64,000 nt of DNA from Sphyrna mokarran (lineage: Eukaryota): positions 10,106,001 to 10,170,000 of the forward strand of contig JAGIQG010000023.1 in assembly GCA_024679065.1 (NCBI GenBank). Reading direction: 5' to 3'. Under the pieces are notes generated by a model that saw only the letters and a program-made list of their open reading frames with translations, made no database searches and was not told where the DNA came from. Of this stretch, positions 576-64,000 are shown in pieces. Position numbers and translations under genes: made by a program. Each line of letters begins with the position of its first letter. Within the stretch, counting starts at the first letter, position 1.

Positions 576-629
576 ATTTTCTATGATTGTAAAGTCCAGC
601 ACTGCTCATTTCTATTTTCTGTGTCACAG

Positions 630-27597: not shown

Positions 27598-27634
27598 ATG
27601 TGGATTCTTATTCTTTTCATCTTTTCTCTGCCTG
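27598..27634 (+). CDS. Gene B signal-peptide exon
   Basis: aaacgATG TGG ATT CTT...CTG CCT G|gtgagt. Encodes MWILILFIFSLP, phase 1, and joins the V exon as ...LPVSGALWAEK. Confidence 0.85.
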
Positions 27635-35012: not shown

Positions 35013-35094
35013 GAGCTGAATATACTTGTCAAGTTTTAACAAAATCACCCACAACTGCAACCACATCTTCAGGATCTACACCTGTCACTGAAAG
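35013..35094 (+). CDS. Gene B Ser/Thr-rich stalk exon
   Basis: catgtctcgatag|GA...GAAAG|gtacag. 82 nt, phase 1 to 2. Encodes GAEYTCQVLTKSPTTATTSSGSTPVTE. Confidence 0.85.
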
Positions 35095-35404
35095 GTACAG
35101 TATTCTCGTTACTGATGTTTCCATTAGCATTGCGTTCCAATCAAAATCAATGATTATCAGTTTTGGCATGAGGGCTTACAATAATTTATCTGAATAGAAA
35201 TGCTAGCTATGTTTACATTGTGCTGTTATCCTGGCTTCCAAACAAGTTCTGTTTCTGTCATTGGAAATTCTTTACCTGCTTAGCAGAAAGAAATTAATAT
35301 TTTGGTTTGCCAACTTTCATATTGTACAACTTTCATTCTTCATGTTAGTCATTTCACCATGAACCCAATCTCATGGAACTGTGCCTGTCACACTCCAGCG
35401 ATGA

Positions 35405-35535
35405 TATAGAGATGCTGGCGTTGGATTGGGGTGAACACAGTAAGAAGTCTGACAACACCAGGTTTAAGTCCAACCGACTTATTTAATAATAAACTCACAC
35501 AAGCTTTCGAGGTTCTGCTCTTCATCAGGTGAATC
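35405..35535 (+). mobile_element. Short Penelope-like terminal fragment specific to the gene B copy
   Basis: aagaagtctgacaacaccaggtttaagtccaac matches the 19.3-kb element. Flanked by duplicated cactccagcgat/cactccagtgat and absent at the paralogous ~16440. Confidence 0.55.
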
Positions 35536-36188
35536 ACTCCAGTGATGCCAGATTTCCTTAACCCTGTGTATTCTGGAGTATCGCTGATAGGAACATTGCA
35601 CTCACTGTCATCTTCTCCTTCTCAGTTGCCTGATTTAATACATTGTTCCCAAACTGAGCAGTTAAAGGCTGTCTGCTTCCTGCTGATTTCAAATTTCCTG
35701 TTAGGAGGTGCACCAGGGAATTGTGGAATGTTAAAAACAGAAAGTTCTGGAAAAAACTCAGCAAGTCTGGCAGCATCTGTGGAGAGAAGAGCAGAGTTAA
35801 CATTGAGTGGAATATGATTCTACTTTGGAACAGTGTGGGATGATATTATTGGAAGATTTTTACTCACCAAACAGATATCTCACCATTGTTATATTGCACC
35901 AGACAATGTTGCTGTCCCAGTTACCAGTCAATTCATAACATTTTTACTTCTAAGATTTTACTCAGCATTACAGATATACAGAGGAAATTTAATGAAAGCA
36001 GCTCCATTTGATCTTATCTAATGATCATGAAGTTAATCAGTGAAACTCTAGTTGATTGCTCCAGTTAACGTGCCTTGTCTGTGCGGGGCTGCTACAATAA
36101 GTCAGAGTGTAAAGAGAAGATTAATGTTTCAAGCATGAAGTTGCCTCATTCCATTCAAATCATTCTGTATTTCTTCCAGTTTGCTCAG

Positions 36189-36279
36189 TTTCATTATCTG
36201 GAATGTGATTCGCTGGGGGCTGTTTACCCTTTTGGTGATTTGTGCTATTTCGGTCACATGGTACACGAGAAAATCTCAG
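36189..36279 (+). CDS. Gene B TM exon with intramembrane Arg (activating type)
   Basis: ttgctcag|T...TCTCAG|gtgagg. 91 nt, phase 2 to 0. Encodes (S)FIIWNVIRWGLFTLLVICAISVTWYTRKSQ. Confidence 0.88.
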
Positions 36280-45386: not shown

Positions 45387-45661
45387 CTAATGAGATACGT
45401 TAGCATATATTGCCATTTTAGACTCATCAAAGTTTGTGTGTTTTCTTTGGGGGCTATCATTGAACCTTGACTCATCCTTGTGATTAACCCAGTGCCTCGA
45501 CCTGTTAACTCCTCAAGCTTTTGAACCTGCAGTGCTGCATTTGTGACTCCTTCCTCATTGTTAATGAAATGGACAGTTTGCTTGCCGTGTGTTTCTGCTG
45601 AGTTCCCTCGATTACGCTTTACATTGGCAGACACAATGTTGTCTTCTACAACTGCCAATTG
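45387..45661 (-). pseudogene. Decayed ITIM exon of gene C (inverted paralog of 4669-4944)
   Basis: Acceptor retained. ITIM Tyr codons read TCT (IVSANV) and AAT (VTNAAL). 275 nt versus 276 nt: a 1-nt deletion near 45441-45444 shifts the third motif (AIYANV) out of frame. Confidence 0.85.
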
Positions 45662-47224
45662 CTGCAATATAGAAAATAAAGATCCAGTTTATTTCCATTT
45701 AACTTGAATGGTGATTTGTGGAGAAATCGATTTCTAGATTATTGCAAATGACATTAGTGAACCAAATAGGTTTTTATTGCAATCGACAATAGTTTTATGA
45801 TCATCATTAGATCCTTAATTCCAGACTTTTATTGAGTTCTGCCTTGGTGGGATTTGAACCCAAGTCCCCAGAAGATGATTCTGCATCTCTAGATTACTAA
45901 TCCAATACCATTTCATCAGTACCTGTTATTAATGACGGTCCACTATTTATGATCACTGTTTTTGGTCTTGCCTGCAAGTGGAAATATCTTTGTTATCTCT
46001 ACCTGAATCTTGAAGATCTCAACCAGACCATTAATTAGACAAATCCAGCTTGCTGAATCTAACCTTCAATTTTTAATTTTCCAAGGCAGAATGAGAAAAG
46101 GAGTTTTGCTGCCATTCTGCGAAATTGTACCTCGCATCCTCAGCAGACCAGATGAAGCTTTCAGGATTTTAAATCAGCCTTTATTCACCCTGTTGTAAGG
46201 GAGTTTGCATCCCAGAAGGTGGCATACTGACACAGAGTACGCAGTATTATAACTTTGCATATGTTATATGTAATTCTCATACACCAATCACAAGTATACA
46301 TTCGTTCAGAAATCATTAATATCCAATTACAGACAATAGATCTGACTACATCATTTATGTCAGGTGAATATAATTAACCAGGTATACCCTCTGTATTTAA
46401 AGTTGGTTATGGTCCAGTCACGAGGCCCCTGAAGGATTGTGCAATAAAGGGGCAATGGGACCATACCAAGTCGATATTCTCTGCTGTTCAGCAGGATGTG
46501 AAATGATCTCATTGAAAATTTTTTAAAAATCTTAATTGAATTCATAGGGCAGATATGAGAAAATGTTTCCTCTGACTGGAGAATCTACAAGACAGAGTTC
46601 ATAAGACCACAAGAGCATATGATATAGGAGCAGAATTAGACTATTCAGCTAATTGAGTCTGCTCCACCATTCAATCATAGCTGATTAGTTTCTCAACCCC
46701 ATTCTCCCACCTTTTCCCAAAAATCTATGATCCCTTCACCACACATTAATCTATCTATCTCTGCCTTAAATCTGTCACAGTCCTCGAGCACAGTTTGGGC
46801 CCATTTACTGAGATTGGATGAGGATACAGAAGGTTCTGTATCTTTGGAATTCTCTGTTGCAGAGAGCTGTGAATGCTTCACCATTGAGTACATTCAAATT
46901 AGACATCAATAGATTTTTGGGAGTTTGAGGAACTAGGCTGTCATACTGAAAGATCACTACAAGATTTCTCTCACACAGCTAACCAAAGAAATGACTTGGG
47001 GCGGAACTTTCCCAGTCTGTCCTCATTGCGAATTGTAGCAGGCGAGACAGCGAATTTGGTGGACCATTTTAAAGGTCCGTTGACCTGGGATGGGAACTTC
47101 TAATCTTGGAGTGTACTTAACCAAACAAATCTCGATCTTGGACTTACCTAAATCTACATGATCCTATTGAATGGCAGGGAGACTCGATGGGCTGAATGGC
47201 CCACTCATGTTCCTGTGGTCTTGT

Positions 47225-48635
47225 AGAACATAGAACATTACAGCGCAGAACAGGCCCTTCGGCCTTCGATGTTGCGCCGACCAATTATGAAAAAAGCAAT
47301 GACCCTCCAAACTAAACCATTCCCTTCTCTTCCATAAACTTATCAACTAACCTCTTAAACGCACCAAACTTGGCGCATCTACAACTGCCGCAGGCAGGGC
47401 ATTCCACTCCCTAACCACCCTCTGGGTAAAGAACCTACGTCTGATATCCGTCCTATAACTATCACCCCTTACTTTAAAGCTGTGTCCCCTCGTGCTAGCT
47501 TTCTCCATCCTAGGAAAAAGGCTATCACTGTCCACCCTATCTAAACCTCTAATCATCTTATATGTTTCGATAAGGTCCCCTCTTAGCCGCCTCCTTTCTA
47601 ACGAAAACAACCTCAAATCCCTCAGCCTCTCTTCATAAGACCTGCCCTCCATACCAGGCAACATCCTGGTAAACCTCCTCTGTACCCTCTCCAATGCCTC
47701 CACATCTTTCTTATAATGTGGGGACCAGAACTGCACACAATACTCCAAGTGCGGCCGCACTAGAGTTTTGTACAGTTGCAACATGACGTTGCGGCTCCGA
47801 AATTCAATCCCCCTACCAATAAAAGCTAAGACTCCATATGCCTTCTTAACAACCTTATCGACTTGACTGCCTACTTTCAGGGATCTATGCACAAATACAC
47901 CAAGATCCCTCTGTTCATCAACACTATTAAGAATCCTACCATTAGCCCTATACTCTACACATTTATTATTCCTGCCATAGTGCATTACCTCACACTTTTC
48001 CACATTAAACTCCATTTGCCACCTCTCGGCCCAGCTCTGCAACTTGTCCAAGTCTCTCTGCAAACTATAACACCCCTCTTCACTATCTACCACTCCACCG
48101 ACTTTAGTGTCATCTGCAAATTTACTAATCCATCCTTCAATACCCTCATCCAGATCATTTATAAAAATTACAAACAGCAGGGGCCCAAAACAGATCCCTG
48201 AGGTACACCACTTGTAACCGAACTCCACGATGAATATCTCCCATCAACCACCACCCTCTGTCTTCTATCTGCTAGCCAATTCCTAATCCAATTAGCTAAA
48301 TCACCCTCAATCCCATACATCTGCATTTTCTGCAGAAGCCTTCCATGGGCCACCTTATCGAACGCCTTACTAAAGTCCATATATACCACATCAACTGCCT
48401 TACCCCCATCCACCTCTTTGGTCACTTTTTCAAAAAACTCAATAAGGTTAGTAAGGCACGACCTACCCTTCACAAAACCATGCTGACTATCCCCAATCAA
48501 TTCATTTCTCTCTAAATAACTATAAATCCTATCCCTAATAATTCTCTCCAATACTTTGCCCACAACAGAAGTGAGACTCACTGGCCTATAATTCCCTGGA
48601 AAGTCTCTCTTCCCCTTCTTGAACAATGGGACCAC
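47225..48635 (-). mobile_element. Young 5'-truncated CR1 LINE (RT domain)
   Basis: PGNYRPVSLTSVVGK...SQHGFVKGRSCLTNL...YMDFSKAFDKV...GVPQGSVLGP...ISKFADDTK, with one frameshift at ~48190 and an (agaacat)n tail. Absent from the paralogous gene 0 intron (~965). Confidence 0.95.
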
Positions 48636-48869: not shown

Positions 48870-48892
48870 CCTTGTCGATTTGCCTCTGATAC
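48870..48892 (-). pseudogene. Remnant of the gene C TM exon (last ~23 nt only, donor GT>AT)
   Basis: Reverse strand gtatcagaggcaaatcgacaagg|ATgaatttc aligns to gene 0 gtaccggaggcgaattgacaagg|GTgagtttc, and the following intron is homologous. The upstream hydrophobic part is replaced by LINE-like sequence. Confidence 0.8.
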
Positions 48893-50658
48893 TTGACCAG
48901 TCCATTGATATCATTTTGCAGCCGATAGCAATCTTTCTCGCTATCTACCGCATGAGTAATTTTCATGTTGATACTCTCTACTTTACGCCTAAATCATTAA
49001 TATATGCCACAAAATGCAGGGGACCTCCCGCTGAGCATTGGAACAAATCCAGTCACAGACGTCAACAATCATCTTTTGTTTCCAGCCACAATTGATTCTT
49101 GACCATTTGTTTACGGAAGTGGGTTTTGAAATTATATAGCGCTCTTCATGACCTTTGAATGGTCTAAAGAGCTTTACAATCTAGGAAGTACTTTTAAACA
49201 AACACCACCACTGCTGTTATATGGGAGATTGGCAACCAATTTGCACACAGCAAAATCTCAAATAGCAGTGAACTTTGACCAGATCAATATTGGCCATTTC
49301 TCTAGTGCTCTCCTTGTCTGCTTTTTCTATAGATAAGAAGTGACCTGCCGTGTATTTCCAGCAGCTTTTTCATCATGTTGATGTTTAGTTGATATTTTTT
49401 CCTCATCATCATTGTAACAATTTCTGATCTTTTTGTACATCCCAACTATGTTAGGGGTTGTGGGTTTTAACAGAAAAGGAAAAGACTTAGTTTGCACGCG
49501 TAGATTCAAACAAACACAAAACGCATTTTAATAAAGAGCTGCTCTCTGCACTGCATGAAGTATAAAAGTGTCAGTAACACAGCAGCCTGAACATGCACCC
49601 TAATGACATCACATCAAATCAACCCTTTTTAAAGCTCGCATCTTCATTATGAAGTGAACACAACAGCTTCTCGCCAAGGTTCCTGATCTGAAAGTATTGA
49701 AAAATGATGCCCAGTATCCCAGATCATCAGAGACTGGATGTATGACCCAAAATGTGTGTCAGAACCCTGCAGATGACCCAACATGATGACCTCCATGGGA
49801 ATTACTTGGGACATTGGAATTTCCAATGGACAATTCTGCTGTTTCCTGGGTCCGTCTGTGAAAATCTGTAGCTTTGGGTAAGAGCTTCAAACAATTATTG
49901 CATAATTATCCAGGAAATATTAGACTGAAAGAATCAAGTTTAATTTCTGAGTAGACACAGAACTAACTCCTGAATAATCACATTGATGCCCGATCTCCCC
50001 CAATCTTCTGATGAATTCCCTGACATATCATTTATCACCCCACATCTCTGACTATCCCATCTGACCTTGTACCTAAGCCACAAGCTGAGCCAATCCGATA
50101 TTCTCTCTGACTATCCTTGAATACCCAATGTCCAAATCTGATTAGCCCCTCAGGCCAAGCTACCCCTGTCAACCTGACATAATTACCACACTATTCATCT
50201 ACCATCTCATCAACCTACTACAACTTCATCCACTTGCTTCCCTACACATATACCACTTCACCTATCTGCACCCATTTTACATACTTATGACCTCACTCAT
50301 CTGTCTTCTCATCCACTTATCACCCTTGCCTCCAATTACCAACACATCTATACACTTGTCTCCCTATCCAGCTTACACTCTACCCACCTGTGGTCCTACA
50401 GAGTCCCAGTGGAGTTCTCTAAGGGACACTGCATTCCACAGATTTGGCGAATCTGGACTCAGAATATCAGACAAGAAATGCGGAGCTGAGTCGAGGATGG
50501 AAAGCTTCGAGTGGAATGGCAATCCAACAATGATTGCTGCTCTGTGACTGACCCAGGACAATAAATGATATCCATCCTTGTGCCTAAATTATTCAACAGG
50601 ATTTAATCCCTCAGACAGAAGTCATGTCATTTAAACACTAACAATAAAAACAACATAC

Positions 50659-50737
50659 CTTTTAGCAAGTTAGGAGTTTGGAGTTGAGGAATGTGTTGGC
50701 GATACTGTTAAAGCTTCACAAGAATTTTCAGGTCCAA
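50659..50737 (-). CDS. Gene C stalk exon with in-frame stop (CDS ends at 50670)
   Basis: ttttcttgtttcag|TT...AAAAG|gtatgt. 79 nt, phase 1 to 2 like the A/B stalks. Encodes VGPENSCEALTVSPTHSSTPNS*LAK, with TAA at 50672-50670. Confidence 0.8.
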
Positions 50738-52105
50738 CTGAAACAAGAAAATAATATACAGATCAGCCTCATTTTCATTGTCTTTAACTGAGAGAGCCAC
50801 ATTGTCAAGTGGCGCCTTGACCTAAGGGAGAACCTCATTGAGGAAGCACCTCATCTTGGGATGTGGGTGTCAGTGTTTAGCCCAGCAATTATTGCCCATC
50901 CATAATTGCCCTTGAGACGATGGTCATGAGATGCCTCTTAAACCACTGCAGTCCTTGTGGTGTAGGTACATCTACAGTGCTGTGAGGGAGAGAGCACCCA
51001 TCGCACCTGTGACACTCAAAACCAAACCACCTGACTATTCTAATCCCATTTTTCAACACATGGTCCATAGCTTTGTGTGCCTTGGCATCACGAGTGCACA
51101 TCTAAATAATTCTTAAATGTTATGAGGGTCTGGAAGGCACAAGTGAAATTTGCCTATTCCTCCTGGAAGAGGACTAGGCAAACATTTACATTTATCTCAA
51201 AGGACGTGTAGGTCAGCAGTTCAACCAGACAATAGCACTGTCAACAGCAGAGCACAATCTCCGTGCTATACAGGGATATCAACACCTTTCTCGGAAGGAG
51301 AATTTGAACTCACAACCCATTGGTTTCAGAAATCAGGCTGCTACCATCTGAGCCCCTTCTGACACTGACATATTAAACATTCAAACAGGTTAAAGTCCTC
51401 GTTAATTCTGAACTATAGTTAGCGTTTATGTTAAATTACTGAGTAATTTAATGTTTAGAACATGGAATTCTGAGAGTTTGAGCAGCATTTTGTGATGATA
51501 GAATTTTACGGCAAAGAAGGAAATTTGGTCCATTGCCCTCCATCGCTATGAAAGAATTTGCCATTCAGAATCATAGAATCCATGCAGTGCCCAAGGAGGC
51601 CATTTAGCCCATGGAGTCGACAGCGACACTCCCATTATTATGTCTTTTCCCCAAATCCTCCTAAATATCTGCTCCTTTTTTGCTTCCCCTTGTAAAAGCT
51701 ATTATTCATGCTGGTTCTAATGCAATCTATACCTTAATAATCATTTGCATCAATAAAATTCTCTCAATTTCTCCCGCTGTCCTTGTTGTGATGATCTTAA
51801 TGTATTCTCTCAAACAGTGACGCACTTACTAGTGGAAATAATAAGTCTCAATTTAACTAATCAAAGCCTCCAATAATTTTGAATAGATCTAGCAGATCTT
51901 GTCTTTCTGTTCTAATGAGCCTCTGCTGGTGTCAGCTATTGGTATCACTCTTGTGTCTGCATCAGACATTCTATACTCAAACTCTACTCTAGGACTCAAA
52001 AATCAAAGCTGACACTCCTGTGCAGTACTGAGGAAGTGCTGCACTGTTGGGGATGCAGCCTTTTGGATGGGATGTTGAACTGAGTCCCCAGTCTGCTTGC
52101 TCTAT

Positions 52106-52434
52106 GGGCAGCATGGTGTAACAGTGGTCAGCACTGCTGCCTCACAGTGCCAGAGACACCGGGTTCAATTCTGACGTCGAGTGACTGTGTGGAGTTTGCA
52201 CATTCTCCCCGAGTCTGCATGGGTTTCCTCCAGAGGCTTCGGCTTCCTCCCATAATGCAAAGACATGCAGGTTAGATGGATTGGTGAAGCTAAATTGCCC
52301 TTTAGTGTCAGGGGAAACCAGCTAGGGTAAATGCATGGGGTTATGGGGATAAGGTCTGGATGGAATCATCGTTGGCAGAGACTCAATGCACCAAATGGTC
52401 ACCTTCTGCACTGTAGAATTCTATGGATTCTATG
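52106..52434 (+). mobile_element. HE1-like tRNA-derived SINE nested in another SINE
   Basis: gggcagcatggtgtaacagtggtcagcactgctgcctcacag, B box gggttcaattc, tail gcactgtagaattctatggattctatg. Confidence 0.8.
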
Positions 52435-53086
52435 AATCTGCGCATGTATAAGATCTGTGGCACTCGATCTCCTGAAGAAATGCAGGAGCGTTATCCCAAA
52501 TCACCCGGCAATATTTATCCTCAATCAAAAACAGGTTCTCAGTTTGCTGTGTGCAAATTGGCTGCTGTGTTCCCTGCCTCACAACAGTGGCAGTGTTTCA
52601 AAAAGCATTTCATTGCCTGTGAAGTGCTTTGAGAAGTCAGGTGACTATAAAAATAAATGTGAGACATTCTTCCATTTCGTAAGTGAGACTTTTTAAGATG
52701 CTGTCATTTTATATCAGTATTTCAAATTTCTATCCTTACCATTCATCCAAAAGCAAGAGACATCAGCTAAAGATTGTTTTTCATAATTTGATCTCCAAGA
52801 AATGGGATCAGGAATGGTAAATGGAGATTTTATCAATCAAGTTCTGTTTAATTTTAAAGGGATTACTGCAACATTTACACGTTTGGGGAATATTTTATGA
52901 TCCTAATATTTTGAATCAATATTTTTTATCAGTAACTTTGTTCTGAATGGTTGATGGACAAAGAAGAATGAATTTTGTCAGTTGCAAATCATTCAGAGAG
53001 ACATTAGGAAGCAAACCAGAAACCAGAATAGACAAATGACAATAAATATTTCACTGACCACATTTTACATTTACACCATCACTTAC

Positions 53087-53410
53087 CAACACTGTTGATC
53101 TGTGTCACATAACTGCAATTCGCCCCTGATCTGTTGAACAGTGACACTGTAACCATTTCACTGGATTTGTCTCCCTGGTTATTTGAGGCTATGCAGTAAT
53201 ATTCATGACGTTGCTGTGTGAAGGATTGACAATGTAGATCCAGTTTATTGGTGTCAGAGATCTTTGAATCTTCAGGCAGGGTCTTCTCATACCATGTATA
53301 CTGAATGGGAAGTGATCCCTGGACAGACTCACAGGAGACGGACACTGAGCCCCCAGAACATGAGGCATTTGGTGGTGATAAATATCTAAGTTCAGGAACA
53401 GATACGGGTT
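53087..53410 (-). CDS. Gene C C2-like Ig exon (last unit)
   Basis: cttttgcccacag|AA...GTTG|gtaagt. 324 nt, phase 1-1, open. Confidence 0.9.
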
Positions 53411-54686
53411 CTGTGGGCAAAAGACAACCATGAATGGATTTTCATAGTAGCTTCATTGCAGTGCTCATGTCAGCCTACTTGTGATAACAAGTAAAAAAAA
53501 ACTTTAAGTTTCAACTTCAATTGTTTAAGCTTTAGCATGACCAAAAAGTTAATTTTTTTCATATTATCAATATTTCAACACCTCATCCAGGATGTGAGGA
53601 AGAAAGGAAAGTGTTAGAGACAGAGAGAGAGAGAGATGGCAGTGGAAGCATGGCTGAATGCAGGTAGTATCTATTGATTGCTCTCATGGACAGCAGATAT
53701 TCATGATAGTAAATTAGTTAGTGACAAGCATTGGAGTGTGACCTGTGATGTTTGCTGAGATAATGCAGACATAAATATCTTATATAAAAACTAATCTTGA
53801 CCCAAATTCTCCGATATCAAACGAGGTGCCTCCATTGCCAGTTAGAGTAGGGAATTTGGCGCTCAGCCAAATCTTCATTCACAGCAGCAGGACTGGAGGA
53901 TTCCAGCTGCAGATAATGTTGCTGAACTCCAGCCATTGTTTGTATTTGTATTTAAAGTTCAACAATTAGTACCATTAACATTAAGGTGTGAATACTGTTT
54001 TAAATCTAGGGTGAGGTTTTATGGCCTCGAATGAGCGAGACTGGAAAATCCCGCCCAAAGTCAACAGACATTTCTGTTGTCGGCCCCACACCCACTCCAA
54101 TACCATAGCGGGCAAGGCAGTAAATTTTCAAAGTATCATCCAAAGGACATGAGCTGGGAGATAGAAGCTATCAGCTGGCAGCAACTGAAACAGTTAATTG
54201 AGGAAACTGGCTTGAACTGCTCTCTTTGAGCTGAGTCCCTTTGTTTTTAAACATGTAAAATCGCACATTCTCACTGCAACCAACACTGGACACTGACTTC
54301 ACCAGAGTGTGGAGGTTTAATGAGGAGAACGAATTTATTACAGGAGAAGAAATGAGCTGTTAGTGAGTATCTGGCAAGTATTCGGGACGTGGTGAAGACC
54401 AAATGTCCAGGTATTGGGAGCATGGAATGGGTCCTTACCAACTTGTTAATCAGGAAAGTGTGGTCCAAGGAGCAATAAATCTAACCTCATCTCTCTGGAT
54501 CATTACTCTGAGCCTCTGAATTACAATTCCTCCAACATAATCATTATTCTAACTGCGCTCTAGCTGCCAGAATTGGCACTCCATGGATCCTCCGGATATT
54601 GAAGCTGTCAATGTCTCCTCTCAGATAAAGCACCAATCAGACATTTCAGTTGAGAGTAATAAAGATAATCACTGAGAACAATTTAC

Positions 54687-54995
54687 CATCAGATATTTGT
54701 AGCTTTACAGGAAATATTGAAAGTAGCCCGGACTTAGAAATACCACAGCTGTACCACCCTGCATCTCCTGGGCGAAGATCCTCCATAGTAACAACAAATA
54801 ATCCTTGTGTCTTGTTATCTGTGATCGACATTCTCCCTCGCCGTCCATCTGGATCATTTGATTTTACCAAAACAGAGCACTGACGACTCCAATATTTCAC
54901 ATGTGACTGGGACAATTTGTCATAGTGACAATCGATAGTGATCACTCTTCCCAAAACTCCTGTTACATTATTTTTTGCCCACAATGCATTTGGAG
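54687..54995 (-). CDS. Gene C V-type Ig exon
   Basis: gtcttttcag|CT...GATG|gtaaat. 309 nt, phase 1-1, open. ITIDCHY...KYWSRQC...DAGWYSC. Confidence 0.9.
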
Positions 54996-55657
54996 CTGAA
55001 AAGACAACACATCAAATATTGAACTAAAAATAATTGTTTAATACAAACAGATATATTTTTAATACGATACACTACTGTGCTCAGAGAAATCTGTGCAATA
55101 CATCTGATAATGCTATTGAATAAATTCTTGTTTGAGATCATTGGGCTCATTGAATGAGTGCTCCCCACAGATTGATAATTAAACAACCATATTGAGGTTA
55201 TATACTGAACTCTACATAAAGCAAGACCTCAAGAGGCTCCATTAATCTTTTAGTCCTGGTTCGGGCATGTGATGTTTACTACAGGTGTGCATTATTGTTT
55301 ATTATCATTTGCATAATGCAACACAAGCATAATCCACCTCCAGGAATCATTGCATTCTCAAACAGTAATTGTCAGGCAGCAGATTGTCTGCTCATGATCA
55401 CATTGCTCTTTGAGGCAGCTTATTGCTCATAAATTGGTGCTGAGCTTACTACATCACAACAATTGATCTAAATCAGTTCCAGCTTTGACCAGAACTGACG
55501 TTAAAACTGTCCTGAAGTTCTGAAAAGTGAAAACTAAATGTAATTCCGTTTTTTCCAAAATTGCTTCGAATGACCAATCGAATTAAACTCATCAGCAACT
55601 CAGGCAGACGGTAATTTAAAATTTAGTTGAATTTCTGAAGCTGAAAGAGATATTTAC

Positions 55658-55972
55658 CACTGTTGCTGAATTGTGTCACATAACTGCAATCATTCTCTGA
55701 AATGTGGATCACTGCCACTGTAACTATTTCACTGGATTTGTTTCCCTGGTTATTTGAGGCTGTGCAGTAATATTGATGATGTTGCTGTGTGAAGGATTGA
55801 CAATGTAGATCCAGTTTATTGGTGTCAGAAATCTTTGAATCATCAGATGGGGTCTTTTCATACCATGTGTACTGAATGGGAAGTGATCCCTGGACAGACT
55901 CACAGGAGATGGACACTGAGCCCCAGGCATTTGGTGGTGATAGAAATCTAAGTTCAGGAACAGATACGGGTT
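55658..55972 (-). CDS. Gene C C2-like Ig exon (9-nt in-frame deletion)
   Basis: tttccacag|AA...AGTG|gtaaat. 315 nt, open. Confidence 0.88.
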
Positions 55973-57148
55973 CTGTGGAAATAAAAATCATTAACAGATT
56001 TTCACACTAACTTCATTGCAGTGCTAACGTAAATCTCCTTGTGACACAAGCTAAAAAAAGCTTAAGTTTAAATTTTAAAAGTTTGAATTTGAAAATGACC
56101 AAAAAATTAAACAGTTTCGTATTCTCAATAATTCTATACCTCATCCAGGGTGTGAGGAGGAAGTGAAAGTGATAGAGAGAGAGAGGGAGATGGCAGTGGG
56201 AGCTTAGCCAAATGCAGGTAGTTTCTATTTATTGCTGTCATGAACAGCATATATACATGATAACAAATTAGTTACTAACAAGCATTGGAGTGTGAACTGA
56301 GATAAACTGTAGATGTTTGCTGAGGTAACAAAGACTTAAATACGTTTCTAAAAATCTAATCTTGACCTGAATTCACTGATATCCAGTGATCTTCCTCGCT
56401 GCGAGTTGGAATACAGAATTTGGCACTCAGCCAAATCTGGACTATAGCGGGTCTGGATAATTCCAGCTGCAGACAAGTTTAGTGAATTCCAGCCATTGTT
56501 TGTATTAGTATTTAACAATCAACAGTCAGTTGCATTCAACATTTAAATGTGAGTACTGTTTCAAGTCTAATGCAGGGTTTTATGGTGTCAAACGACTAAG
56601 ATTGGAAAATCCTATCCCAGGTCAGCAGACATTTGTGAGCAAGGCAGTAAAATTCTGATGTAAGTAACATCCAAAGGACATCTGCTGGCAGCAACTGAAA
56701 TAGTTAATTGGGAAAGCTGGCTTGAACTGCTCTTTTTGTTCTGAATCCCTTTGTTTTTGAACTCAGCCCCTCGGACTTTACCCGAGTGTGGAGGTTTAAT
56801 GAGCTGAAGGAATTTACTACAGGAGAAGAAGTGAGCTGTTGGTGGGTATCTGGTCAAGGTCTATTCTCCAGGCATCAGTAGCATGGGTGAGGTCTTTGCC
56901 AACTTGTTTATCAGAAGAGCATGGTCCAAGGTACAATAAATATGACCCCATCTCTCTGGATCATAACTCTGAGCCTCTGAATTCCAATTCCTCCAACATA
57001 ATCATTGTTCTAACTGCCCTCTAGCTGCCAGGCTCTGCACTGCTGTGGAGCCTCCAGACGTCAGAGCTGTCAATGTCTCCTTCAAGATAAAGCACCGATC
57101 AGTCATTTCACTTGAGAGTAATAAAGATAATTACTGAAAACAATTTAC

Positions 57149-57457
57149 CGTCAGATATTTGTAGCTTTACGGAAAATATTGAAAGTAGGCTGGGTTTATC
57201 AATACCACAGGTGTACCACCCTGCATCTCCTCGGCGAAGACCCTCCATAGTAACAGCAAATAATCCTTGTGCCTTGTTATCTGTGATCGACATTCTCCCT
57301 CGCCGTCCATCTGGGTCGTCAGATTTTACCAAAACAGAGCACTGACGACTCCAATATTTCACATGTGACTGGGATAATTTCTCATAGTGACAATCGATAG
57401 TGATCGCTCTTCCCAAAACTCCTGTTACATTATTTTTTGCCCACAATGCACTGGGAG
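57149..57457 (-). CDS. Gene C V-type Ig exon
   Basis: gtctattcag|CT...GACG|gtaaat. 309 nt, open. Confidence 0.9.
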
Positions 57458-58115
57458 CTGAATAGACAAACCATCAAAAAAATGAACTGAAATCATTCTT
57501 TAATACCAACAGATAGACTTTGATAGAATTTGTCACTGTGTTTTGCAATACGTCTTGTAATGTAATTGGATGATTCTTTGTTTGAGATGGTTAGGACCAT
57601 TGAACATATTCTCCCCATGGATTGCTAATAAGACAACCATATTGAGATTGTATTCTAAACCCTTCATAAAGCAAAACTTGAGAGTTTTCATTAATCTTTT
57701 AGTCCTGGTTGGGATCTGTTGGTTTCACCATTGGCGTGTGGTTACTGTTTATTTTCATTTTGTACAGTACAAACACAGTTCCTTTACATCCGACTCCTGG
57801 AGTTATTCAATTTTAAAATAGCAATTGTCAGACAGTAGATTCTCTGCTCATGATCACATTGCTCTTTATAACCAGGTTACTGGTTATAAATTGGCGCTGT
57901 GCATTCTACATCACAAGAATGACCGTGAATCAGTTCCAGCATTGACACGAACGGACTTTAAAACTGTCCTGAAGTTGTGAAAAGTGAAAAATAAATGTTA
58001 TTCTATTTTTATTGAACTTAATTTGAACGACCAATTGAACTAAACCTGTGAGCAATTCTGACAGACATTAATTTAAAAATTAGTTGAATTTTTTGAAGCT
58101 TAAAATGATATTTAC

Positions 58116-58439
58116 CAATGTTGTTGATTTGTGTTAAATAACTGCAATCATTCTCTGAAACGTGGATCACTGACACAGTAACCATTTCACTGGATTTGTT
58201 TCCCTGGTTATTTGAGGCTATGCAGTAATATTGATGATATTGCTGTGTGAAGGATTGACAATGTAGATCCAGTTTATTGGTGTCAGAGATCATTGAATCT
58301 TCGGATGGAGTCTTTTCATACCATGTATACTGAATGGGAAGTGATCCCTGGACAGACTCACAGGAGACGGACACTGAGCCCCCAGAACATGAGGCATTTG
58401 GTGGAGATAGAAATTTAAGCTCTGGAAAAGACACGGGTT
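58116..58439 (-). CDS. Gene C C2-like Ig exon
   Basis: ttttctcacag|AA...ATTG|gtaaat. 324 nt, open. Confidence 0.9.
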
Positions 58440-59700
58440 CTGTGAGAAAAAAGACAATCATTAACGGATTTTCACATAAACTTTGTTGCAGTGTGAACAT
58501 AAGCCGACATTAACTGGTGACACACATCAAATAAATGGGTTAAGTTTCAATTTTAAAACTTTAAAGTTTAGAATGAACAAAAAATTATATAATTTCATAT
58601 TACCAGTATTTAGACATCTCACCCAGGATGTGAGGAGGAAAGGGACATTTTAGAGAGAGAGGGACAAATGGCAGTGGGAGCTTGGCTGAAATCAGGTAGT
58701 ATCTAGTGATTGCTCTCACGGATAGCAGATAGTCATGATAGCAGATTAGTTACTAACAAGCATTGGAGTGTGAACTGAGATAGACATTGGATGTTTGCCA
58801 AGATTACGGGAGATTTAAATATCTTTCATAAAATCCCATCCTGACTTGAATTTTCCAATATTGTGCGATCCATCAGTTGGAATTGGGAATTTGGCACTCA
58901 GCCAAATCTCTGCTCACACCAACGGGACTGAATGATTTCAGCTGCAGTAGATTTTGGTGAATTCCCACCATTGTTTGCATTTGTATTTCACATTCAAAAG
59001 TAAGTACTATTCAACATTTACGTGTGACTACTGTTTCAAGTCTACAGCGAGGTTTTATGGCCTCAAATGAGCGAGACTGGAAAATACCACCCAAGATCAA
59101 TAGACATTTCCACTGTCTGCCCCACACCTGCTTCAGTACCACGACGGGCAAGGCAGTAAAATTCCAACCTAAGTATCATCCAGAAGACATGCATTGGGAG
59201 ATAAAACCTATCAACTGGTAGCAACTAAAATAGTTAATTGGGAAACTGGCTTGCACTGCTCTTTTTGTACTGAGACCCTTTGGTTTTGAACTCAGCACTT
59301 CTCACTTCAACCAAGTGTGGAAGTTTAATGAGCTGAAGGAATTTACTACAGGGAAAGAAGTGAGCTGTTGGTGAGTATCTGGTGAATATTCGGGAAGTGA
59401 TCAAGGTCTAGTCTCCAGGCAACGGGTGCATGAGTGGGATCCTTGCCAACTTTTTGTCAGGTACAGCAGAGTCCAAGGTGAGATAATTCTGACACCCATC
59501 TCTCTCAATCATTACTCTTGAGCCTCTGAATTACAATTCCTCCAACATAATCATTGTTCTAAATGCCCTCTAGCTGCCAGACTCTGCACTGCTGCAGAGC
59601 CTCCAGACATCGGAGGAGCTGTCAATACTTCCTCTCAGATAAAGCACCGATCAGTCATTTCACTTGAGACTAATAAAGATAATCACTGAGAACAATTTAC

Positions 59701-60009
59701 CTTCAGATATTTGTAGCTTTACAGAAAATATTGAAAGTAGGCCGAGTTTATCAATACCACAGCTGTACCATCCTGCATCTTCTGGGCGAAGATCCTCCAT
59801 AGTAACAACAAATAATCCTTGTGTCTTGTTATCTGTGATCGACATTCTCCCTCGCCGTCCATCTGGATCATCTGACTTTACCAAAACAGAGCACTGACGA
59901 CTCCAATATTTCACATGTGACTGGGACAATTTCTCATAGTGACAATCGATAGTGATCGCTCTTCCCAAAACTCCTGTTACATTATTTTTTGCCCACAATG
60001 CACTGGGAA
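59701..60009 (-). CDS. Gene C V-type Ig exon
   Basis: gtccattcag|TT...GAAG|gtaaat. 309 nt, open. Confidence 0.9.
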
Positions 60010-60666
60010 CTGAATGGACAAACCATCAAAAAAATGAACTGAAATCATTCTTTAATACCAACAGATAGACTTTGACAGAATTTGTCACTGTGTTTTGCAA
60101 TACATCTTGTAATGTAATTGAATGATTCTTTGTTTGAGATGGTTGGGACCATTGAACATATTCTCCCCACGGATTGCTAATTAGACAACCATATTGACAT
60201 TGTATTCTAAACCCTTTATAAACAAAACCTTGAGAGTTTCCATTAATGTTTTAGTCCGGGTTGGGATCTGCTGGTTTCACCATTGGTGTGTGGTTACTGC
60301 TTATTTTCATTTTGTACAGTACAAACACAGTTCCTTTACATCCGACTCCTGGAGTTATTCAATTTTAAAATAGCAATTGTCAGACAGTAGATTCTCTGCT
60401 CATGATCACATTGCTCTTTATAACCAGGTTACTGGTTATAACTTGGCGCTGTGCATTCTGCATCACAAGAATGACCGTGAATCAATTCCAGCATTGACAT
60501 GAACAGACTTTAAAACTGTCCTGAAGTTGCAAAAACTGAAACATAAATGTTATTCTATTTTTATTGAACTTAATTGAACGACCAATTGAACTAAACCTGT
60601 GAGCAATTCTGACAGACATTAATTTAAAAATTAGTTGAATTTTTTGAAGCTTAAAATGATATTTAC

Positions 60667-60990
60667 CAATGTTGTTGATTTGTGTTGAATAACTGCAATC
60701 ATTCTCTGAAATGTGGATCACTGACACAGTAACCATTTCACTGGATTTGTTTCCCTGGTTATTTGAGGCTGTGCAGTAATATTGATGATGTTGCTGTGTG
60801 AAGGATTGACAATGTAGATCCAGTTTATTGGTGTCAGAGATCATTGAATCTTCAGATGGAGTCTTTTCATACCATGTGTACTGAATGGGAAGTGATCCCT
60901 GGACAGACTCACAGGAGACGGACACTAGGCCCCCAGAACATGAGGCATTTGGTGGAGATAGAAATTTAAGCTCTGGAACAGACACGGGTT
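60667..60990 (-). CDS. Gene C C2-like Ig exon
   Basis: ttttctcacag|AA...ATTG|gtaaat. 324 nt, open. Confidence 0.9.
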
Positions 60991-62260
60991 CTGTGAGAAA
61001 AAAGACAATCATTAACGGATTTTCACATAAACTTTGTTGCAGTGTGAACATAAGCCGACATTAACTGGTGACACACATTAAATAAATGGGTTAAGTTTCA
61101 ATTTTAAAACTTTAAAGTTTAGAATGAACAAAAAATTATATAATTTCATATTACCAGTATTTAGACATCTCACCCATGATGTGAGGAGGAAAGGGACATT
61201 TTAGAGAGAGAGGGACAAATGGCAGCGGGATCTTGGCTGAATTCAGGTAATATCTAGTGATTGCTCTCACGGATAGCAGATAGTCATGATAGCAGATTAG
61301 TTACTAACAAGCATTGGAGTGTGAACTAAGATAGACATTGGATGTTTGCCGAGATTACGGGAGATTTAAATATCTTTCATAAAATCCAATCCTGACTTGA
61401 ATTTTCCAATATTGTGCGATCCATCTCCACCATCAGTTGGAATTGGGAATTTGGCGCTCAGCCAAATCTCTGCTCACACCAACGGGACTGGATGATTCCA
61501 GCTGCAGTAGATTTTGGTGAATTCCCACCATTGTTTGCATTTGTATTTCACATTCAAACGTAAGTACCATTCAACATTTATGTGTGAGTACTGTTTCAAG
61601 TCTACAGCGAGGTTTTATGGCCTCAAATGAGCGAGACTGGAAAATACCACCCAAGATCAATAGACATTTCCACTGTCTGCCCCACACCTGCTTCAATAGC
61701 ACGACGGGCAAGGCAGTAAAATTCCAACCTAAGTATCATCCAGAAGACATGCATTGGGAGATAAAATCTATCAACTGGTAGCAACTAAAATAGTTAATTG
61801 GGAAACTGGCTTGCACTGCTCTTTTTGTACTGAGACCCTTTGGTTTTGAACTCAGCACTTCTCACTTCAACCAAGTGTGGAAGTTTAATGAGCTGAAGGA
61901 ATTTACTACAGGGAAAGAAGTGAGCTGTTGGTGAGTATCTGGTGAATATTCAGGAAGTGATCAAGGTCTAGTCTCCAGGCAACGGGTGCATGAGTGGGAT
62001 CCTTGCCAACTTTTTGTCAAGGACAGCAGAGTCCAAGGTGAGATAATTCTGACACCCATCTCTCTCGATCATTGCTCTTGAGCCTCTGAATTACAATTCT
62101 TCCAACATAATCATTGTTCTAAATGCCTTCTAGCTGCCGGACTCTGCACTGCTGCAGAGCCTCCAGACATCAGAGGAGCTGTCAATACTTCCTCTCAGAT
62201 AAAGCACCGATCAGTCATTTCACTTGAGACTAATAAAGATAATCACTGAGAACAATTTAC

Positions 62261-62569
62261 CTTCAGATATTTGTAGCTTTACAGAAAATATTGAAAGTAG
62301 GCCGAGTTTATCAATACCACAGCTGTACCATCCTGCATCTTCTGGGCGAAGATCCTCCATAGTAACAACAAATAATCCTTGTGTTTTGTTATCTGAGATT
62401 GACATTCTCCCTCGCCGTCCATCTGGATCGTCTGATTTTACCAAAACAGAGCACTGGCGACTCCAATATTTCACATGTGACTGGGACAATTTGTCATAGT
62501 GACAATCAATAGTGATCGCTCTTCCCAAAGCTCCTGTTACATTATTTTTTGCCCACAATGCTATTGGAG
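62261..62569 (-). CDS. Gene C V-type Ig exon
   Basis: catcttttag|CT...GAAG|gtaaat. 309 nt, open. Confidence 0.9.
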
Positions 62570-63202
62570 CTAAAAAGATGGCAAGTCAAAAGTTGAACTG
62601 AAAATAATCGTTTAATACAAACAGATATGTTTCAACAGGATTTGATACCGTGCTCAGAGAAATCTCTGCGATATATTTTCTAATGCAATTGAATACTTTC
62701 TTGTTTGAGATCATTGGGCTCATTGAGTACGTGCTCCCCACAGATTTATAATTAGGTAACCATATTGAGATTGTATACTAAGCCCTTTATAAAGCAGGAC
62801 ATTAATAGATTACATAATCTTTTAGTTGTGTTCACCATAGGATTATGGCTATTGGTATTTCCATTTTGTACAATGAAAGCACAGTTCTGTCCCTTCCTGC
62901 TAATGAAATTATAAAATTTTCATACAGCAATTGTCAAACAGAAGATTGTCTGCTCATGATCACATTAATCTTTGAGGGAGCTTATTGCTCATAGATTGGT
63001 GCTGAGCTTCCTACATCACAACAATGGCCGTGAATCAGTTCCAGCATTGACTGGAACGGAATTTAAGACTGTCCTGATGTTATGAAAAGTGAAAAATAAA
63101 TGCAATTCTATTTTAGTAAAGTTGCTTTGAACGACCAATAAATTTAAATGACATTAATTTAAAAATTAGTTGATTTTTTTTTAATTTTAATGTGATATTT
63201 AC

Positions 63203-63526
63203 CAATGTTGCTGACTTGTGTTAAATAACTGCAATCATTCTCCGAAATGTAGATCACTGACACTATAACCATTTCACTGGATTTGTCTCCCCGGTTATTT
63301 GAGGCTGTGCAGTAATATTGATGATGTCGCTGTGTGAAGGATTGACAATGTAGATCCAGTTTATTGCTGTCAGAGATCTTTGAATCTTCAGACGAGGTCT
63401 TTTTATACCATGTGTACTGAATGGGAAGTGATCCCTGGACAGACTCACAGGAGACGGACACTGAGCCCCCAGAACATGAGGCATTTGGTGCTGATAGAAA
63501 TTCAAGTTCAGGGGCTGACACGGGTT
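63203..63526 (-). CDS. Gene C C2-like Ig exon (gene continues beyond the window end)
   Basis: tttttcccacag|AA...ATTG|gtaaat. 324 nt, open. The upstream intron repeats the array pattern up to 64000. Confidence 0.9.
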
Positions 63527-64000
63527 CTGTGGGAAAAAGACAATCGTTAACGGATTTTCTCAATAATTTCATTGCAGTGTTTATGTGACACTAAGTAAAA
63601 AAAGCTTTAACTTTAAACTTTAAATGATTAATCTTTAGAATGACCAAAATATTAATTGGTTTCATATTACCAGTACTTCTACACTTCATCCAGGGTGTGA
63701 GGAGGAAGGGGAAGTGTTAGCGAGATATGGCAGTGGGCAATTGTCCGAAAGCAGATCTATTGATTGCTCTCATGTACAGCACATATTCATGATGATAGAT
63801 TAGTTAGTGACAAGCATTGGAGTGTGATCTGAGACAGACTGTGTATGTAGTGGAGATTTAAACATCTTTCCTAAAATCGATTGAATCTTGAGCTAAAAAG
63901 TCTGACATTGAATGATCCGCCCCCACTGCCAGTTAGAATAGGGAATTTGGCACTCAGGCAAATCTCCATTCACAGCAGCGGGACTGGATAATTCCAGCTG

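What the first reader, a model, noticed from the sequence alone, without database searches (positions are those of the whole stretch)
50670..64000. Giant secreted poly-Ig (V-C2)n protein built from a former inhibitory CD300/pIgR-like receptor
Seen in sequence: nine consecutive minus-strand Ig exons (C2, then four V-C2 pairs; about 950 codons). All are phase 1-1, AG/GT-bounded and open, and their only indels are multiples of 3, although the introns between units carry many indels. They lead into a stalk exon that ends in TAA, and no intact TM exon follows. The array runs off the window, so the protein is larger still. Established: CD300/TREM receptors have one V domain and pIgR has up to five tandem V domains; soluble secretory component arises by proteolysis rather than by a genomic stop. 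Inference: this is a genetically encoded, multivalent, soluble member of a paired-receptor family in a shark. It could be a high-avidity decoy, an opsonin/agglutinin or an Ig-binding mucosal protein. I do not recognise it as a described gene.
Basis: partly seen in the sequence, partly recalled or inferred. Interest (0 to 1): 0.92.

Follow-up and report, generated by a model that had tools for sequence, protein, structure and literature searches.

The report
Anchorless giant shark immune receptor gene
A shark gene of a known immune-receptor family strings together at least nine antibody-like domains but has lost its membrane anchor, so it either makes a free-floating binding protein or is a gene that has begun to die.

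Summary
Nine minus-strand Ig exons (C2, then four V-C2 pairs; 2,847 nt) are open, phase 1-1 and AG/GT-bounded. Exons are 91-97% alike between units and introns 78-90%. Exons carry one 9-nt indel against 37 intron gap runs.

The gene is not an unknown kind. It belongs to the elasmobranch MDIR family, which has a CD300/pIgR-type V and an FcRL-type C2. Its exons are 48-69% identical to skate MDIR3 and 85-93% identical to Mustelus asterias RefSeq models of 11-12 Ig domains. Models with up to 19 domains exist in skates. First readers of this scan noted similar (V-C2)n genes elsewhere in this genome.

The anchor and the inhibitory tail are dead:
- TAA in the stalk exon where Mustelus has Lys.
- TM exon reduced to 23 nt, with its donor lost.
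- One cytoplasmic exon deleted.
- Both ITIM tyrosines replaced, plus a frameshift.

RNA contigs from two studies show the predicted splice joints, but they cannot be assigned to this gene. A soluble product is therefore plausible (about 0.5) but unproven. The main rival is a young pseudogene.

The parts
63203..63526 (-). C2a exon (324 nt, phase 1-1), FcRL-like C2 domain
   Evidence: PDB FCRL5 match for the C2 type
62261..62569 (-). Va exon (309 nt), CD300/pIgR-type V domain lacking the first Cys of the C-C' pair
60667..60990 (-). C2b exon (324 nt)
59701..60009 (-). Vb exon (309 nt). It is a chimera, Vc-like in its 5' part and Va-like in its 3' part, and marks the unequal crossover that added a unit
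58116..58439 (-). C2c exon (324 nt)
57149..57457 (-). Vc exon (309 nt)
55658..55972 (-). C2d exon (315 nt). An in-frame 9-nt deletion removes one of the two extra Cys
54687..54995 (-). Vd exon (309 nt)
53087..53410 (-). C2e exon (324 nt), the membrane-proximal type of C2
50659..50737 (-). Stalk exon (79 nt) with in-frame TAA at 50672-50670, where Mustelus P0152 has Lys; its GT donor is intact
48870..48892 (-). Last 23 nt of the former TM exon. The donor is now AT, and RT-like sequence lies where the hydrophobic part should be
47350..48635 (-). LINE reverse-transcriptase ORFs inserted in the former TM-cytoplasmic intron
   Evidence: they fill a gap in the colinearity
46396..46403 (-). Junction of a deletion. 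The stretch of the neighbouring gene (about 1933-3522 +) that holds its first cytoplasmic exon (2398-2451) has no counterpart here
45387..45661 (-). Remnant of the last (ITIM) exon. The acceptor is intact. Both ITIM Tyr codons are replaced (TCT at 45631-45629, AAT at 45541-45539), and a 1-nt deletion puts the third Tyr motif and the old stop out of frame

Best explanation
Gene C is a member of the elasmobranch MDIR family. These are immune-type receptors built from a CD300/pIgR-type V domain and an FcRL-type C2 domain.

Its ectodomain grew by unequal crossing-over between V-C2 exon pairs of about 2.55 kb. All exons are phase 1-1, so each gain stays in frame.

It descends from an ITIM-bearing inhibitory receptor, but its anchor and tail are destroyed. 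There is a stop codon in the stalk exon. The TM exon is reduced to 23 nt. One cytoplasmic exon is deleted. The ITIM tyrosines are replaced and the last exon is frameshifted.

The Ig exons have nevertheless stayed intact and constrained. The most likely reading is therefore that the gene now encodes an anchorless, secreted, multivalent poly-Ig protein. Such a protein would bind the still unknown ligands of its membrane-bound inhibitory and activating neighbours, either as a soluble competitor or as a high-avidity binder.

Shown: family, architecture, mode of growth, loss of anchor and tail, and constraint on the Ig exons.

Inferred: that the unseen 5' part is intact, that the gene is transcribed, and that the product is secreted and useful.

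My confidence by part is about 0.95 for family and architecture, about 0.9 for loss of the anchor, and about 0.5 for a working soluble product.
For: Family:
- The V exon hits Pfam V-set at 4.4e-12, above the cut-off.
- In the PDB the V exon matches pIgR (2.1e-37, summed over domains) and CLM-1/CD300 (1.4e-14).
- The C2 exon matches FCRL5 at 1.6e-44 over 6 stretches.
- MDIR3 of the clearnose skate is among the hits. It is 48-54% identical to the V exons and 52-69% identical to the C2 exons over their full length.
- The best relatives are Mustelus asterias models. All 4 V exons and 3 of 5 C2 exons match P0153 best, at 88-93%.

Architecture is usual for the family:
- 16 of 47 parsed relatives have 8 or more alternating V/C2 domains, up to 19.

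Growth:
- Vb switches from Vc-like to Va-like inside the V exon.
- The flanks of that switch are 94-99% identical.

Constraint:
- Exons are 0.91-0.97 identical, against 0.66-0.84 for introns of the old unit pairs.
- 1 exon gap run against 37 intron gap runs.
- dN/dS is 0.16-0.62 in 6 V pairs and 0.39-0.93 in 10 C2 pairs.
- All nine exons stay open in only 82 of 20,000 random placements of the same substitutions.

Dead tail.

Contrast between tail and Ig exons (my arithmetic):
- 3 small disabling lesions lie in about 377 nt of surviving tail coding sequence, against 0 in 2,847 nt of Ig exons.
- If lesions fell evenly, all three would land in the tail with probability 0.0016. Setting the first lesion aside gives 0.014.
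- Gene A in the same window shows what a dead member looks like, with stops or frameshifts in its V, C2 and TM exons.

Splicing of this exon type is real:
- The joint 50735/7-53087 is seen in 4 of 4 runs.
- The joint 54995-55658 is seen in 3 of 4 runs.
- The joint 53410-54687 is seen in 1 of 4 runs.
Against: - No transcript can be assigned to gene C. No listed run is on record as RNA, and each holds only 5-7% of the sampled words.
- The contigs carry other letters than the window. 50700 C>T is seen in all 4 runs, and there are 5-6 differences in 79 nt of C2e. 15 of 17 checked differences equal the letter of other units. The contigs may therefore come from paralogues or from another species.
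- One contig runs 8 nt past the stalk donor, as expected of an anchored relative.
- Whether any RNA carries the TAA is unknown.
- The leader and the 5' units lie outside the window.
- The tail has few changes of its own: 4 of 51 residues, against 6 for the intact neighbour. Its death may therefore be recent, and a recent death weakens the argument from intact Ig exons.
- C2 exons vary almost evenly over codon positions (23/19/21), and some C2 pairs reach dN/dS of 0.8-0.93.
- C2d has lost one of its extra Cys.
- Exchange with paralogous arrays could keep the exons open without selection on this gene.
Confidence: 0.5

Rival explanations
1. Young pseudogene. The whole gene stopped working when the stalk stop or the TM loss arose. 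The Ig exons look intact only because too little time has passed, or because unequal crossover and conversion with sister units and neighbouring arrays keep refreshing them.
For: - Pseudogenes occur in this very cluster (gene A).
- The tail remnant has only 4 private changes in 51 residues, no more than the intact neighbour's 6, which suggests a recent loss of constraint.
- A unit was gained very recently, with flanks 96-99% identical, so homogenisation is active.
- Variation in the C2 exons is nearly even over codon positions, and some C2 pairs have dN/dS of 0.8-0.93.
- No RNA can be assigned to this gene.
Against: - There are five or more separate lesions in the tail region, three small and two large, and none in 2,847 nt of Ig exons.
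- By my arithmetic the small lesions alone give P of 0.0016 to 0.014 under an even spread.
- All 18 splice sites of the Ig exons are intact.
- The old unit pairs keep exons 0.87-0.96 identical while their introns fell to 0.66-0.84.
- Exchange within the array cannot remove lesions without selection.
Confidence: 0.33
2. Still a membrane receptor. On this reading the TAA is a base error or a rare allele, and the transcript reaches a TM exon that I did not find, or the protein is held on the cell by a partner.
For: - The stalk donor and the acceptor of the last exon are intact.
- RNA contigs of close relatives splice onward from the stalk exon.
- The TAA is a single change from the Lys codon position of Mustelus.
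Against: - Loss of the anchor does not depend on the TAA. The hydrophobic part of the TM exon is replaced by RT-like sequence and its donor is AT.
- tblastn with three kinds of family tails found no other TM exon on the minus strand between about 38 and 50.6 kb at E below 5.
- The C-terminus before the TAA has no hydrophobic end that could take a GPI anchor.
Confidence: 0.06
3. Assembly artefact. On this reading the array is a mis-assembled pile of reads from several two-domain genes.
For: Tandem repeats of 2.5 kb at 78-99% identity are hard to assemble. No DNA run of the source was available to check this.
Against: - The units differ by unit-specific substitutions and 37 intron indels, and form a clean colinear series of 2,467-2,562 nt.
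- There are no N or gaps in the window.
- RNA contigs cross C2-to-V and V-to-C2 joints, so multi-pair transcripts exist in this family.
- RefSeq models of other elasmobranchs have the same repeated layout.
Confidence: 0.02

Closest known systems
Modular domain immune-type receptors (MDIR), e.g. MDIR3 of the clearnose skate (P0190, 701 aa)
   Same: - Same two domain types, with the same borders and the same order.
- V exons are 48-54% identical and C2 exons 52-69% identical to MDIR3.
- MDIR3 parses as V-V-C2-V-C2 plus TM plus Tyr motifs.
- A multigene cluster with inhibitory and activating forms is also seen in this window.
   Different: - At least nine Ig exons here, against five domains in MDIR3.
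- No membrane anchor and no working ITIM.
- The V subtype lacks the first Cys of the C-C' pair.
- The founding paper (Cannon et al. 2006) was not held. What I say of its contents beyond the passages in PMC3031540 is recalled.
Mustelus asterias RefSeq models: 'titin-like' (P0153, 1,314 aa), LOC144511684 (P0152, 1,458 aa), LOC144511685 (P0001, XP_078098046.1, 1,254 aa)
   Same: - 85-93% identical exon by exon.
- P0153 has a leader, one V with the C-C' Cys pair, then five V of the gene C subtype, each followed by C2. This makes it the likely orthologue.
- P0152 has the same stalk, followed by a TM and Tyr motifs.
   Different: - P0152 is anchored and carries ITIM-like motifs.
- These are automatic models. 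The tails of P0001, P0152 and P0153 match repeat or intron sequence in the window, so their 3' ends are doubtful.
Polymeric Ig receptor / secretory component
   Same: The V domain is most like pIgR domains in the PDB. Both are multi-domain, and both have a soluble form.
   Different: - pIgR has tandem V domains only, whereas here V alternates with an FcRL-like C2.
- By general knowledge, secretory component is cut from a membrane protein.
- The second disulfide (YWC...C) is missing here.
- No binding data exist.
CD300/CMRF35 family
   Same: V-domain sequence similarity (1.4e-14 to CLM-1). Both are paired inhibitory and activating clusters.
   Different: By passages of PMC3031540, CD300 has a single V with two disulfides. 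Here there are many domains and one disulfide per V.
Fc receptor-like proteins (FCRL5)
   Same: The C2 exon aligns to six successive FCRL5 domains. Both have long strings of Ig domains and ITIM tails in relatives.
   Different: By general knowledge, FCRL ectodomains hold no CD300-type V.
Germline-encoded soluble members of immune receptor families: carp SITR, human LILRA3 and LAIR2
   Same: These are genes without a TM in families of anchored receptors. SITR has a CD300-like V and is related to MDIRs by its authors' account (passages of PMC3031540).
   Different: SITR has two Ig domains and shown secretion. Here there are nine or more domains and secretion is not shown.

Membership tests
MDIR (elasmobranch modular domain immune-type receptors) | V-type domain like that of a named MDIR | tested here: met
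   The 4 V exons are 48-54% identical to the three V domains of MDIR3, at E 1e-32 to 1e-35
MDIR (elasmobranch modular domain immune-type receptors) | C2/FcR-homologue-like domain like that of a named MDIR | tested here: met
   The 5 C2 exons are 52-69% identical to the two C2 domains of MDIR3. FCRL5 is the best PDB match
MDIR (elasmobranch modular domain immune-type receptors) | Variable number of these modules in series | tested here: met
   The 47 relatives parse as strings of 4 to 19 V/C2 domains. Here the order is C2-(V-C2)x4, and the array continues off the window
MDIR (elasmobranch modular domain immune-type receptors) | Multigene cluster with ITIM-bearing and charged-TM forms | tested here: met
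   An inhibitory tail lies at 598-4945(+), and charged-TM exons lie at 36187-36279 and 17100-17192
MDIR (elasmobranch modular domain immune-type receptors) | Type I membrane anchor | tested here: not met
   Stop in the stalk; TM exon reduced to 23 nt. This reads as a derived loss, not as a reason to exclude the gene from the family
MDIR (elasmobranch modular domain immune-type receptors) | The authors' own definition (domain subfamilies) | not testable with these tools
   Cannon et al. 2006 (PMC3701310) is not held
Polymeric Ig receptor | Ectodomain of tandem V-type domains only | tested here: not met
   V alternates with C2
Polymeric Ig receptor | Second (C-C') disulfide, YWC...C | tested here: not met
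   All 4 V exons read YWSRQC
Polymeric Ig receptor | Binds polymeric Ig or J chain and is transcytosed | not testable with these tools
   Needs protein work
CD300/CMRF35 | Single V ectodomain with two disulfides | tested here: not met
   Nine or more domains, and one canonical Cys pair per V. The definition is from passages of PMC3031540
FCRL | Ectodomain of FcR-type Ig domains without a CD300-type V | tested here: not met
   V exons are present. The definition is recalled
Germline-encoded soluble receptor (SITR/LILRA3/LAIR2 kind) | No TM encoded | tested here: met
Germline-encoded soluble receptor (SITR/LILRA3/LAIR2 kind) | Signal peptide, transcript and secretion | not testable with these tools
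   The leader lies off the window. The RNA contigs cannot be assigned.

The most novel reading that the evidence does not exclude
Sharks have J chain and polymeric IgM. By my recall, which no call here checked, no pIgR has been described in them. Gene C could be a germline-encoded counterpart of secretory component: a free poly-Ig protein made of pIgR-type V and FcRL-type C2 modules. Both module types have Ig-binding relatives. Such a protein would coat or cross-link polymeric IgM at mucosal surfaces. The one unpaired Cys in every V domain (YWSRQC) could serve as a covalent hook. That V subtype is conserved from Mustelus to Hemiscyllium and Chiloscyllium.
Probability: 0.06. Interest if true: 0.85.

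Novelty: new variant of a known kind. Interest (0 to 1): 0.42.

Why it matters
The MDIR family is barely studied. In four text searches of the held library I found only one paper that mentions it.

This locus shows how such receptors gain domains. A crossover inside a phase 1-1 V exon adds a whole V-C2 pair in frame. The locus also catches an inhibitory receptor after it has lost its anchor.

If the product is made, it would be a very large soluble multivalent member of a paired-receptor family in a shark. It would be a natural candidate for a decoy, an opsonin or an Ig-binding protein.

If the product is not made, the locus is a dated example of how a giant receptor gene dies from its 3' end.

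Either way, the giant (V-C2)n form is not a new kind. RefSeq already predicts it in many elasmobranchs.

Tried and rejected
- **Tandem Repeats Finder** missed the 2.5-kb units because its longest period is 500. I defined the units by anchors and MAFFT instead.
- **Papers:** Cannon et al. 2006 and a 2010 review were not held. Two papers on pIgR and IgM gave only the statement that cartilaginous fish have J chain. Searches for shark CD300 or pIgR-like poly-Ig proteins found nothing on this family. Supplements were not opened.
- **Runs:** only six small-share runs, none on record as RNA. Laying four of them showed the joints but not the gene of origin, and the table did not list the letters at the TAA.
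- **A possible alternative last exon in the C2-to-V intron.** It matches the tail of P0153 and is open in units b and c. It is only partly matched in unit a and has a stop in unit d. It has next to no contig depth in unit d. I rejected it as a conserved exon.
- **The exon-like stretch at 50453-50392,** which matches the tail of P0001. The same stretch read on the other strand matches the tail of P0152, so it is probably a repeat that the gene models picked up.
- **A second protein search** with P0153 brought no closer relative and no protein flagged as encoded by the window.
- **Structure prediction** was not run. Sequence matches to solved pIgR, CD300 and FCRL5 were already clear, and the tool gives no coordinates with which to judge whether the Cys is exposed.
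- **The spliced protein** was never joined.

Full report
**What is there.** On the minus strand from 63526 to 53087 lie nine Ig exons in the order C2, V, C2, V, C2, V, C2, V, C2. The C2 exons are 324 nt, except C2d at 315 nt. The V exons are 309 nt. Together they make 2,847 nt. All nine follow a pyrimidine tract and AG, end before GT, are phase 1-1, and are open. The window ends in the intron upstream of the first C2 exon, so the gene continues beyond 64000. There are no N in the window.

**More than chance.** I aligned the four full units of 2,467-2,562 nt.
- C2 exons are 0.910-0.972 identical, V exons 0.922-0.958, and introns 0.775-0.900.
- In 200-column windows, the old unit pairs keep 0.87-0.96 identity in exons and 0.66-0.84 in introns.
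- Exon columns hold one gap run, of 9 nt. Intron columns hold 37, of which 9 are multiples of three. At the intron rate 11.8 exon gaps are expected, and P(<=1) is 9.5e-5.
- Nei-Gojobori dN/dS is 0.16-0.62 for the 6 V pairs and 0.39-0.93 for the 10 C2 pairs.
- The nine exons differ from their unit consensus at 122 sites, split 34/36/52 over codon positions. When the same number of changes is placed at random, all exons stay open in 82 of 20,000 trials. At 2.5 times that number, none of 20,000 stay open.
- C2 exons vary almost evenly over codon positions (23/19/21). V exons vary mostly at third positions (7/10/17).

**How the array grew.** Unit 2 follows unit 3 up to the middle of the V exon and follows unit 1 from there on. 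The switch lies between alignment columns 1082 and 1185, inside the V exon, which spans columns 1000-1308. The flanks are 94-99% identical. So the latest unit was added by an unequal crossover within a V exon. The crossover left a chimeric but in-frame Vb.

**What family it is.**
- The V exon matches Pfam V-set at 4.4e-12, above the cut-off. The C2 exon matches Ig_3, Ig_2 and Ig_C17orf99, each just under its cut-off.
- Against solved structures, the V exon is closest to pIgR (2.1e-37, summed over its domains), then CLM-1/CD300 (1.4e-14), then NKp44 and TREM2.
- The C2 exon is closest to FCRL5, at 1.6e-44 over six stretches.
- A full HMMER scan with one V exon found 1,907 proteins at E up to 0.001. 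The best was a 1,254-aa protein with five V stretches. It is XP_078098046.1 of Mustelus asterias, named 'uncharacterized'.
- A word-based search with that protein listed 47 proteins at E up to 1e-20, nearly all from sharks, skates and rays. Their names include 'polymeric immunoglobulin receptor-like', 'Fc receptor-like protein 5', 'titin-like' and 'uncharacterized'. One is 'Modular domain immune-type receptor 3' of the clearnose skate.
- The window's V exons are 48-54% identical to MDIR3 over their full length, and its C2 exons 52-69%.

I parsed 47 relatives with HMMs built from the separate exon translations. I left out the TRIM69-like and hare FCRL5 rows, and I added P0007 and P0151.
- All 47 are strings of V and C2 domains.
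- 16 of the 47 have eight or more domains, and the longest have 18 and 19.
- Six of the long models have internal hydrophobic segments and may be fused neighbours.
- P0152 (12 domains), P0154 (19) and P0165/P0166 (8 each) have a single TM at the end.
- My TM test is crude and misses charged TMs.

The Mustelus 'titin-like' model P0153 is the best match for all 4 V exons (88.2-92.2%) and for 3 of 5 C2 exons. It has a leader, one V with the usual Cys pair, and then five V of the gene C subtype. That subtype reads YWSRQC in place of YWC....C. It also occurs in Hemiscyllium and Chiloscyllium proteins, and in anchored Mustelus receptors. So it is an old, conserved subtype and is not peculiar to this gene.

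The source is thus a galeomorph shark near Mustelus (lineage). This is inferred from identity levels only.

**The 3' end.**
- The stalk exon is 50737-50659. Its frame reads on from C2e and meets TAA at 50672-50670, 11 nt before an intact GTATGT donor.
- The Mustelus receptor P0152 has the same stalk, with Lys at the site of the stop. A TM and Tyr motifs follow it.
- Downstream, gene C is colinear with the intact 3' part of the neighbouring plus-strand gene: 48892-48636 with 696-966, 47212-46582 with 978-1596, 46579-46403 with 1763-1933, 46396-45746 with 3522-4179, and 45749-45272 with 4581-5058.
- Of the TM exon only the last 23 nt remain, and the donor is now AT. The sequence before the remnant is like reverse transcriptase.
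- A LINE with RVT_1 ORFs sits at 47350-48635.
- The neighbour's stretch 1933-3522, which holds its first cytoplasmic exon, has no counterpart in gene C.
- The last exon keeps its acceptor. Both ITIM tyrosines are replaced, and a 1-nt deletion shifts the frame before the third Tyr motif.
- tblastn with inhibitory and activating family tails found no other TM exon on this strand between about 38 and 50.6 kb.

The loss of the anchor therefore does not rest on the single TAA.

**RNA.**
- Six runs from two studies hold 5-7% of the sampled words, and none is on record as RNA.
- Contigs of four of them, laid on 50350-56050, show joints exactly at the predicted borders. The joint 50735(7) to 53087 is seen in 4 of 4 runs, 54995 to 55658 in 3 of 4, and 53410 to 54687 in 1 of 4. 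The material is therefore spliced RNA of this exon type.
- The contigs differ from the window. 50700 C>T is seen in all four runs, and there are 5-6 other letters in 79 nt of C2e. 15 of 17 checked differences equal the letter found in other units of the window.
- One contig covers the stalk exon with 3 mismatches and runs 8 nt beyond its donor.
- The contigs may come from paralogues, from upstream units, or from related species. They do not show that gene C is expressed, nor whether any RNA carries the TAA.

**Reading.**
- The tail region carries three small disabling lesions in about 377 nt of surviving coding sequence: the stop, the lost donor and the frameshift. It also carries two large lesions. 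The 2,847 nt of Ig exons carry none.
- If small lesions fell evenly, all three would land in the tail with probability 0.0016, or 0.014 if the first is set aside (my arithmetic).
- Gene A in the same window has stops or frameshifts in its V, C2 and TM exons. That is how a dead member looks.
- This favours continued selection on the Ig part after the anchor was lost, which points to a soluble product.
- Against it, the tail has only 4 private changes in 51 residues, against 6 in the intact neighbour, so the loss may be recent.
- Three of those four changes sit in the ITIMs. I cannot explain this (note).
- I put a working soluble protein at about 0.5, a young pseudogene at about 0.33, a hidden anchor at 0.06 and an assembly artefact at 0.02.

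**How it would work.** The membrane-bound relatives form an inhibitory/activating pair system with shared ectodomain modules. An anchorless copy with many V-C2 pairs would bind the same ligands with high avidity and without signalling. It could act as a competitor or as a cross-linker. This is inference, and the ligands are unknown. If the stalk donor were joined to the surviving last-exon acceptor, the stop would lie 11 nt from the last junction and the old 3' end could serve as untranslated region. This is a testable guess.

**Known or new.**
- The same passages describe carp SITR, a secreted two-domain relative, and name LILRA3 and LAIR2 as soluble genes in receptor families.
- Text searches for the family and for shark pIgR- or CD300-like poly-Ig proteins found no paper on giant or anchorless MDIRs. 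That library lacks most subscription journals, and I opened no supplements.
- First readers of this scan noted similar (V-C2)n genes elsewhere in this genome, and a continuation of this gene beyond 64000 with ten or more further pairs. I could not test those notes.
- My verdict is a real gene of a known family, in a giant form that RefSeq already predicts in other species, whose derived anchorless state is new if it works.

Noticed in passing
window 50385-50530, both strands: The same stretch matches the last 67 aa of Mustelus model P0001 on the minus strand and the last 44 aa of model P0152 on the plus strand. It is probably a repeat that automatic gene models took up as a coding end.
   Followed up: partly
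window 57797-57702 and 60349-60254 (-): The 32-aa tail of the Mustelus 'titin-like' model P0153 matches open intron sequence between C2 and V in units b and c. Unit a matches only in part, and unit d has a stop there. It is likely an artefact of the model, not a conserved exon.
   Followed up: partly
window 598-717, 2398-2451, 4666-4945 (+): TM exon, a short cytoplasmic exon (18 of 18 residues identical to Mustelus P0152) and an intact last exon with three Tyr motifs. These are the 3' end of an inhibitory gene whose Ig exons lie before the window start. A first-reader note (s1-887375) calls that gene (V-C2)x10.
   Followed up: partly
window 10863-17192 (+): Gene A is a V-C2 member with a stop and a frameshift in V, a frameshift in C2 and a stop in its charged TM exon. 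It is a plain pseudogene of the family.
   Followed up: partly
window 27598-36279 (+): Gene B has a leader at 27598, V at 30239-30547 with the full YWC...C pair, C2 at 33414-33734, and a TM exon at 36187-36279 holding Arg. It looks like an intact activating member, convergent with gene C.
   Followed up: partly
window 45631-45629 and 45541-45539 (-): Three of the four residues private to gene C in the last-exon remnant lie in the two ITIMs, and they include both tyrosines. The remnant as a whole has changed no more than the intact neighbour. This is either chance or a selected loss of inhibition before the anchor went.
   Followed up: partly
window 47350-48635 (-) and 48893-48966 (-): A LINE reverse-transcriptase fragment (RVT_1) lies in the former intron. 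A second RT-like piece abuts the TM-exon remnant.
   Followed up: yes
window 52069-52450 and 55889-56050: Very deep piles of RNA contigs with many loose ends. These are SINE-like repeats in the introns.
   Followed up: no
window 55925-55933 region of C2d (-): The 9-nt deletion removes the Cys of the N-terminal 'ASC' motif, while the C-terminal 'DCSY' Cys stays. One RNA contig (run X4) has 9 extra letters at 55924, so it comes from a copy without the deletion.
   Followed up: partly
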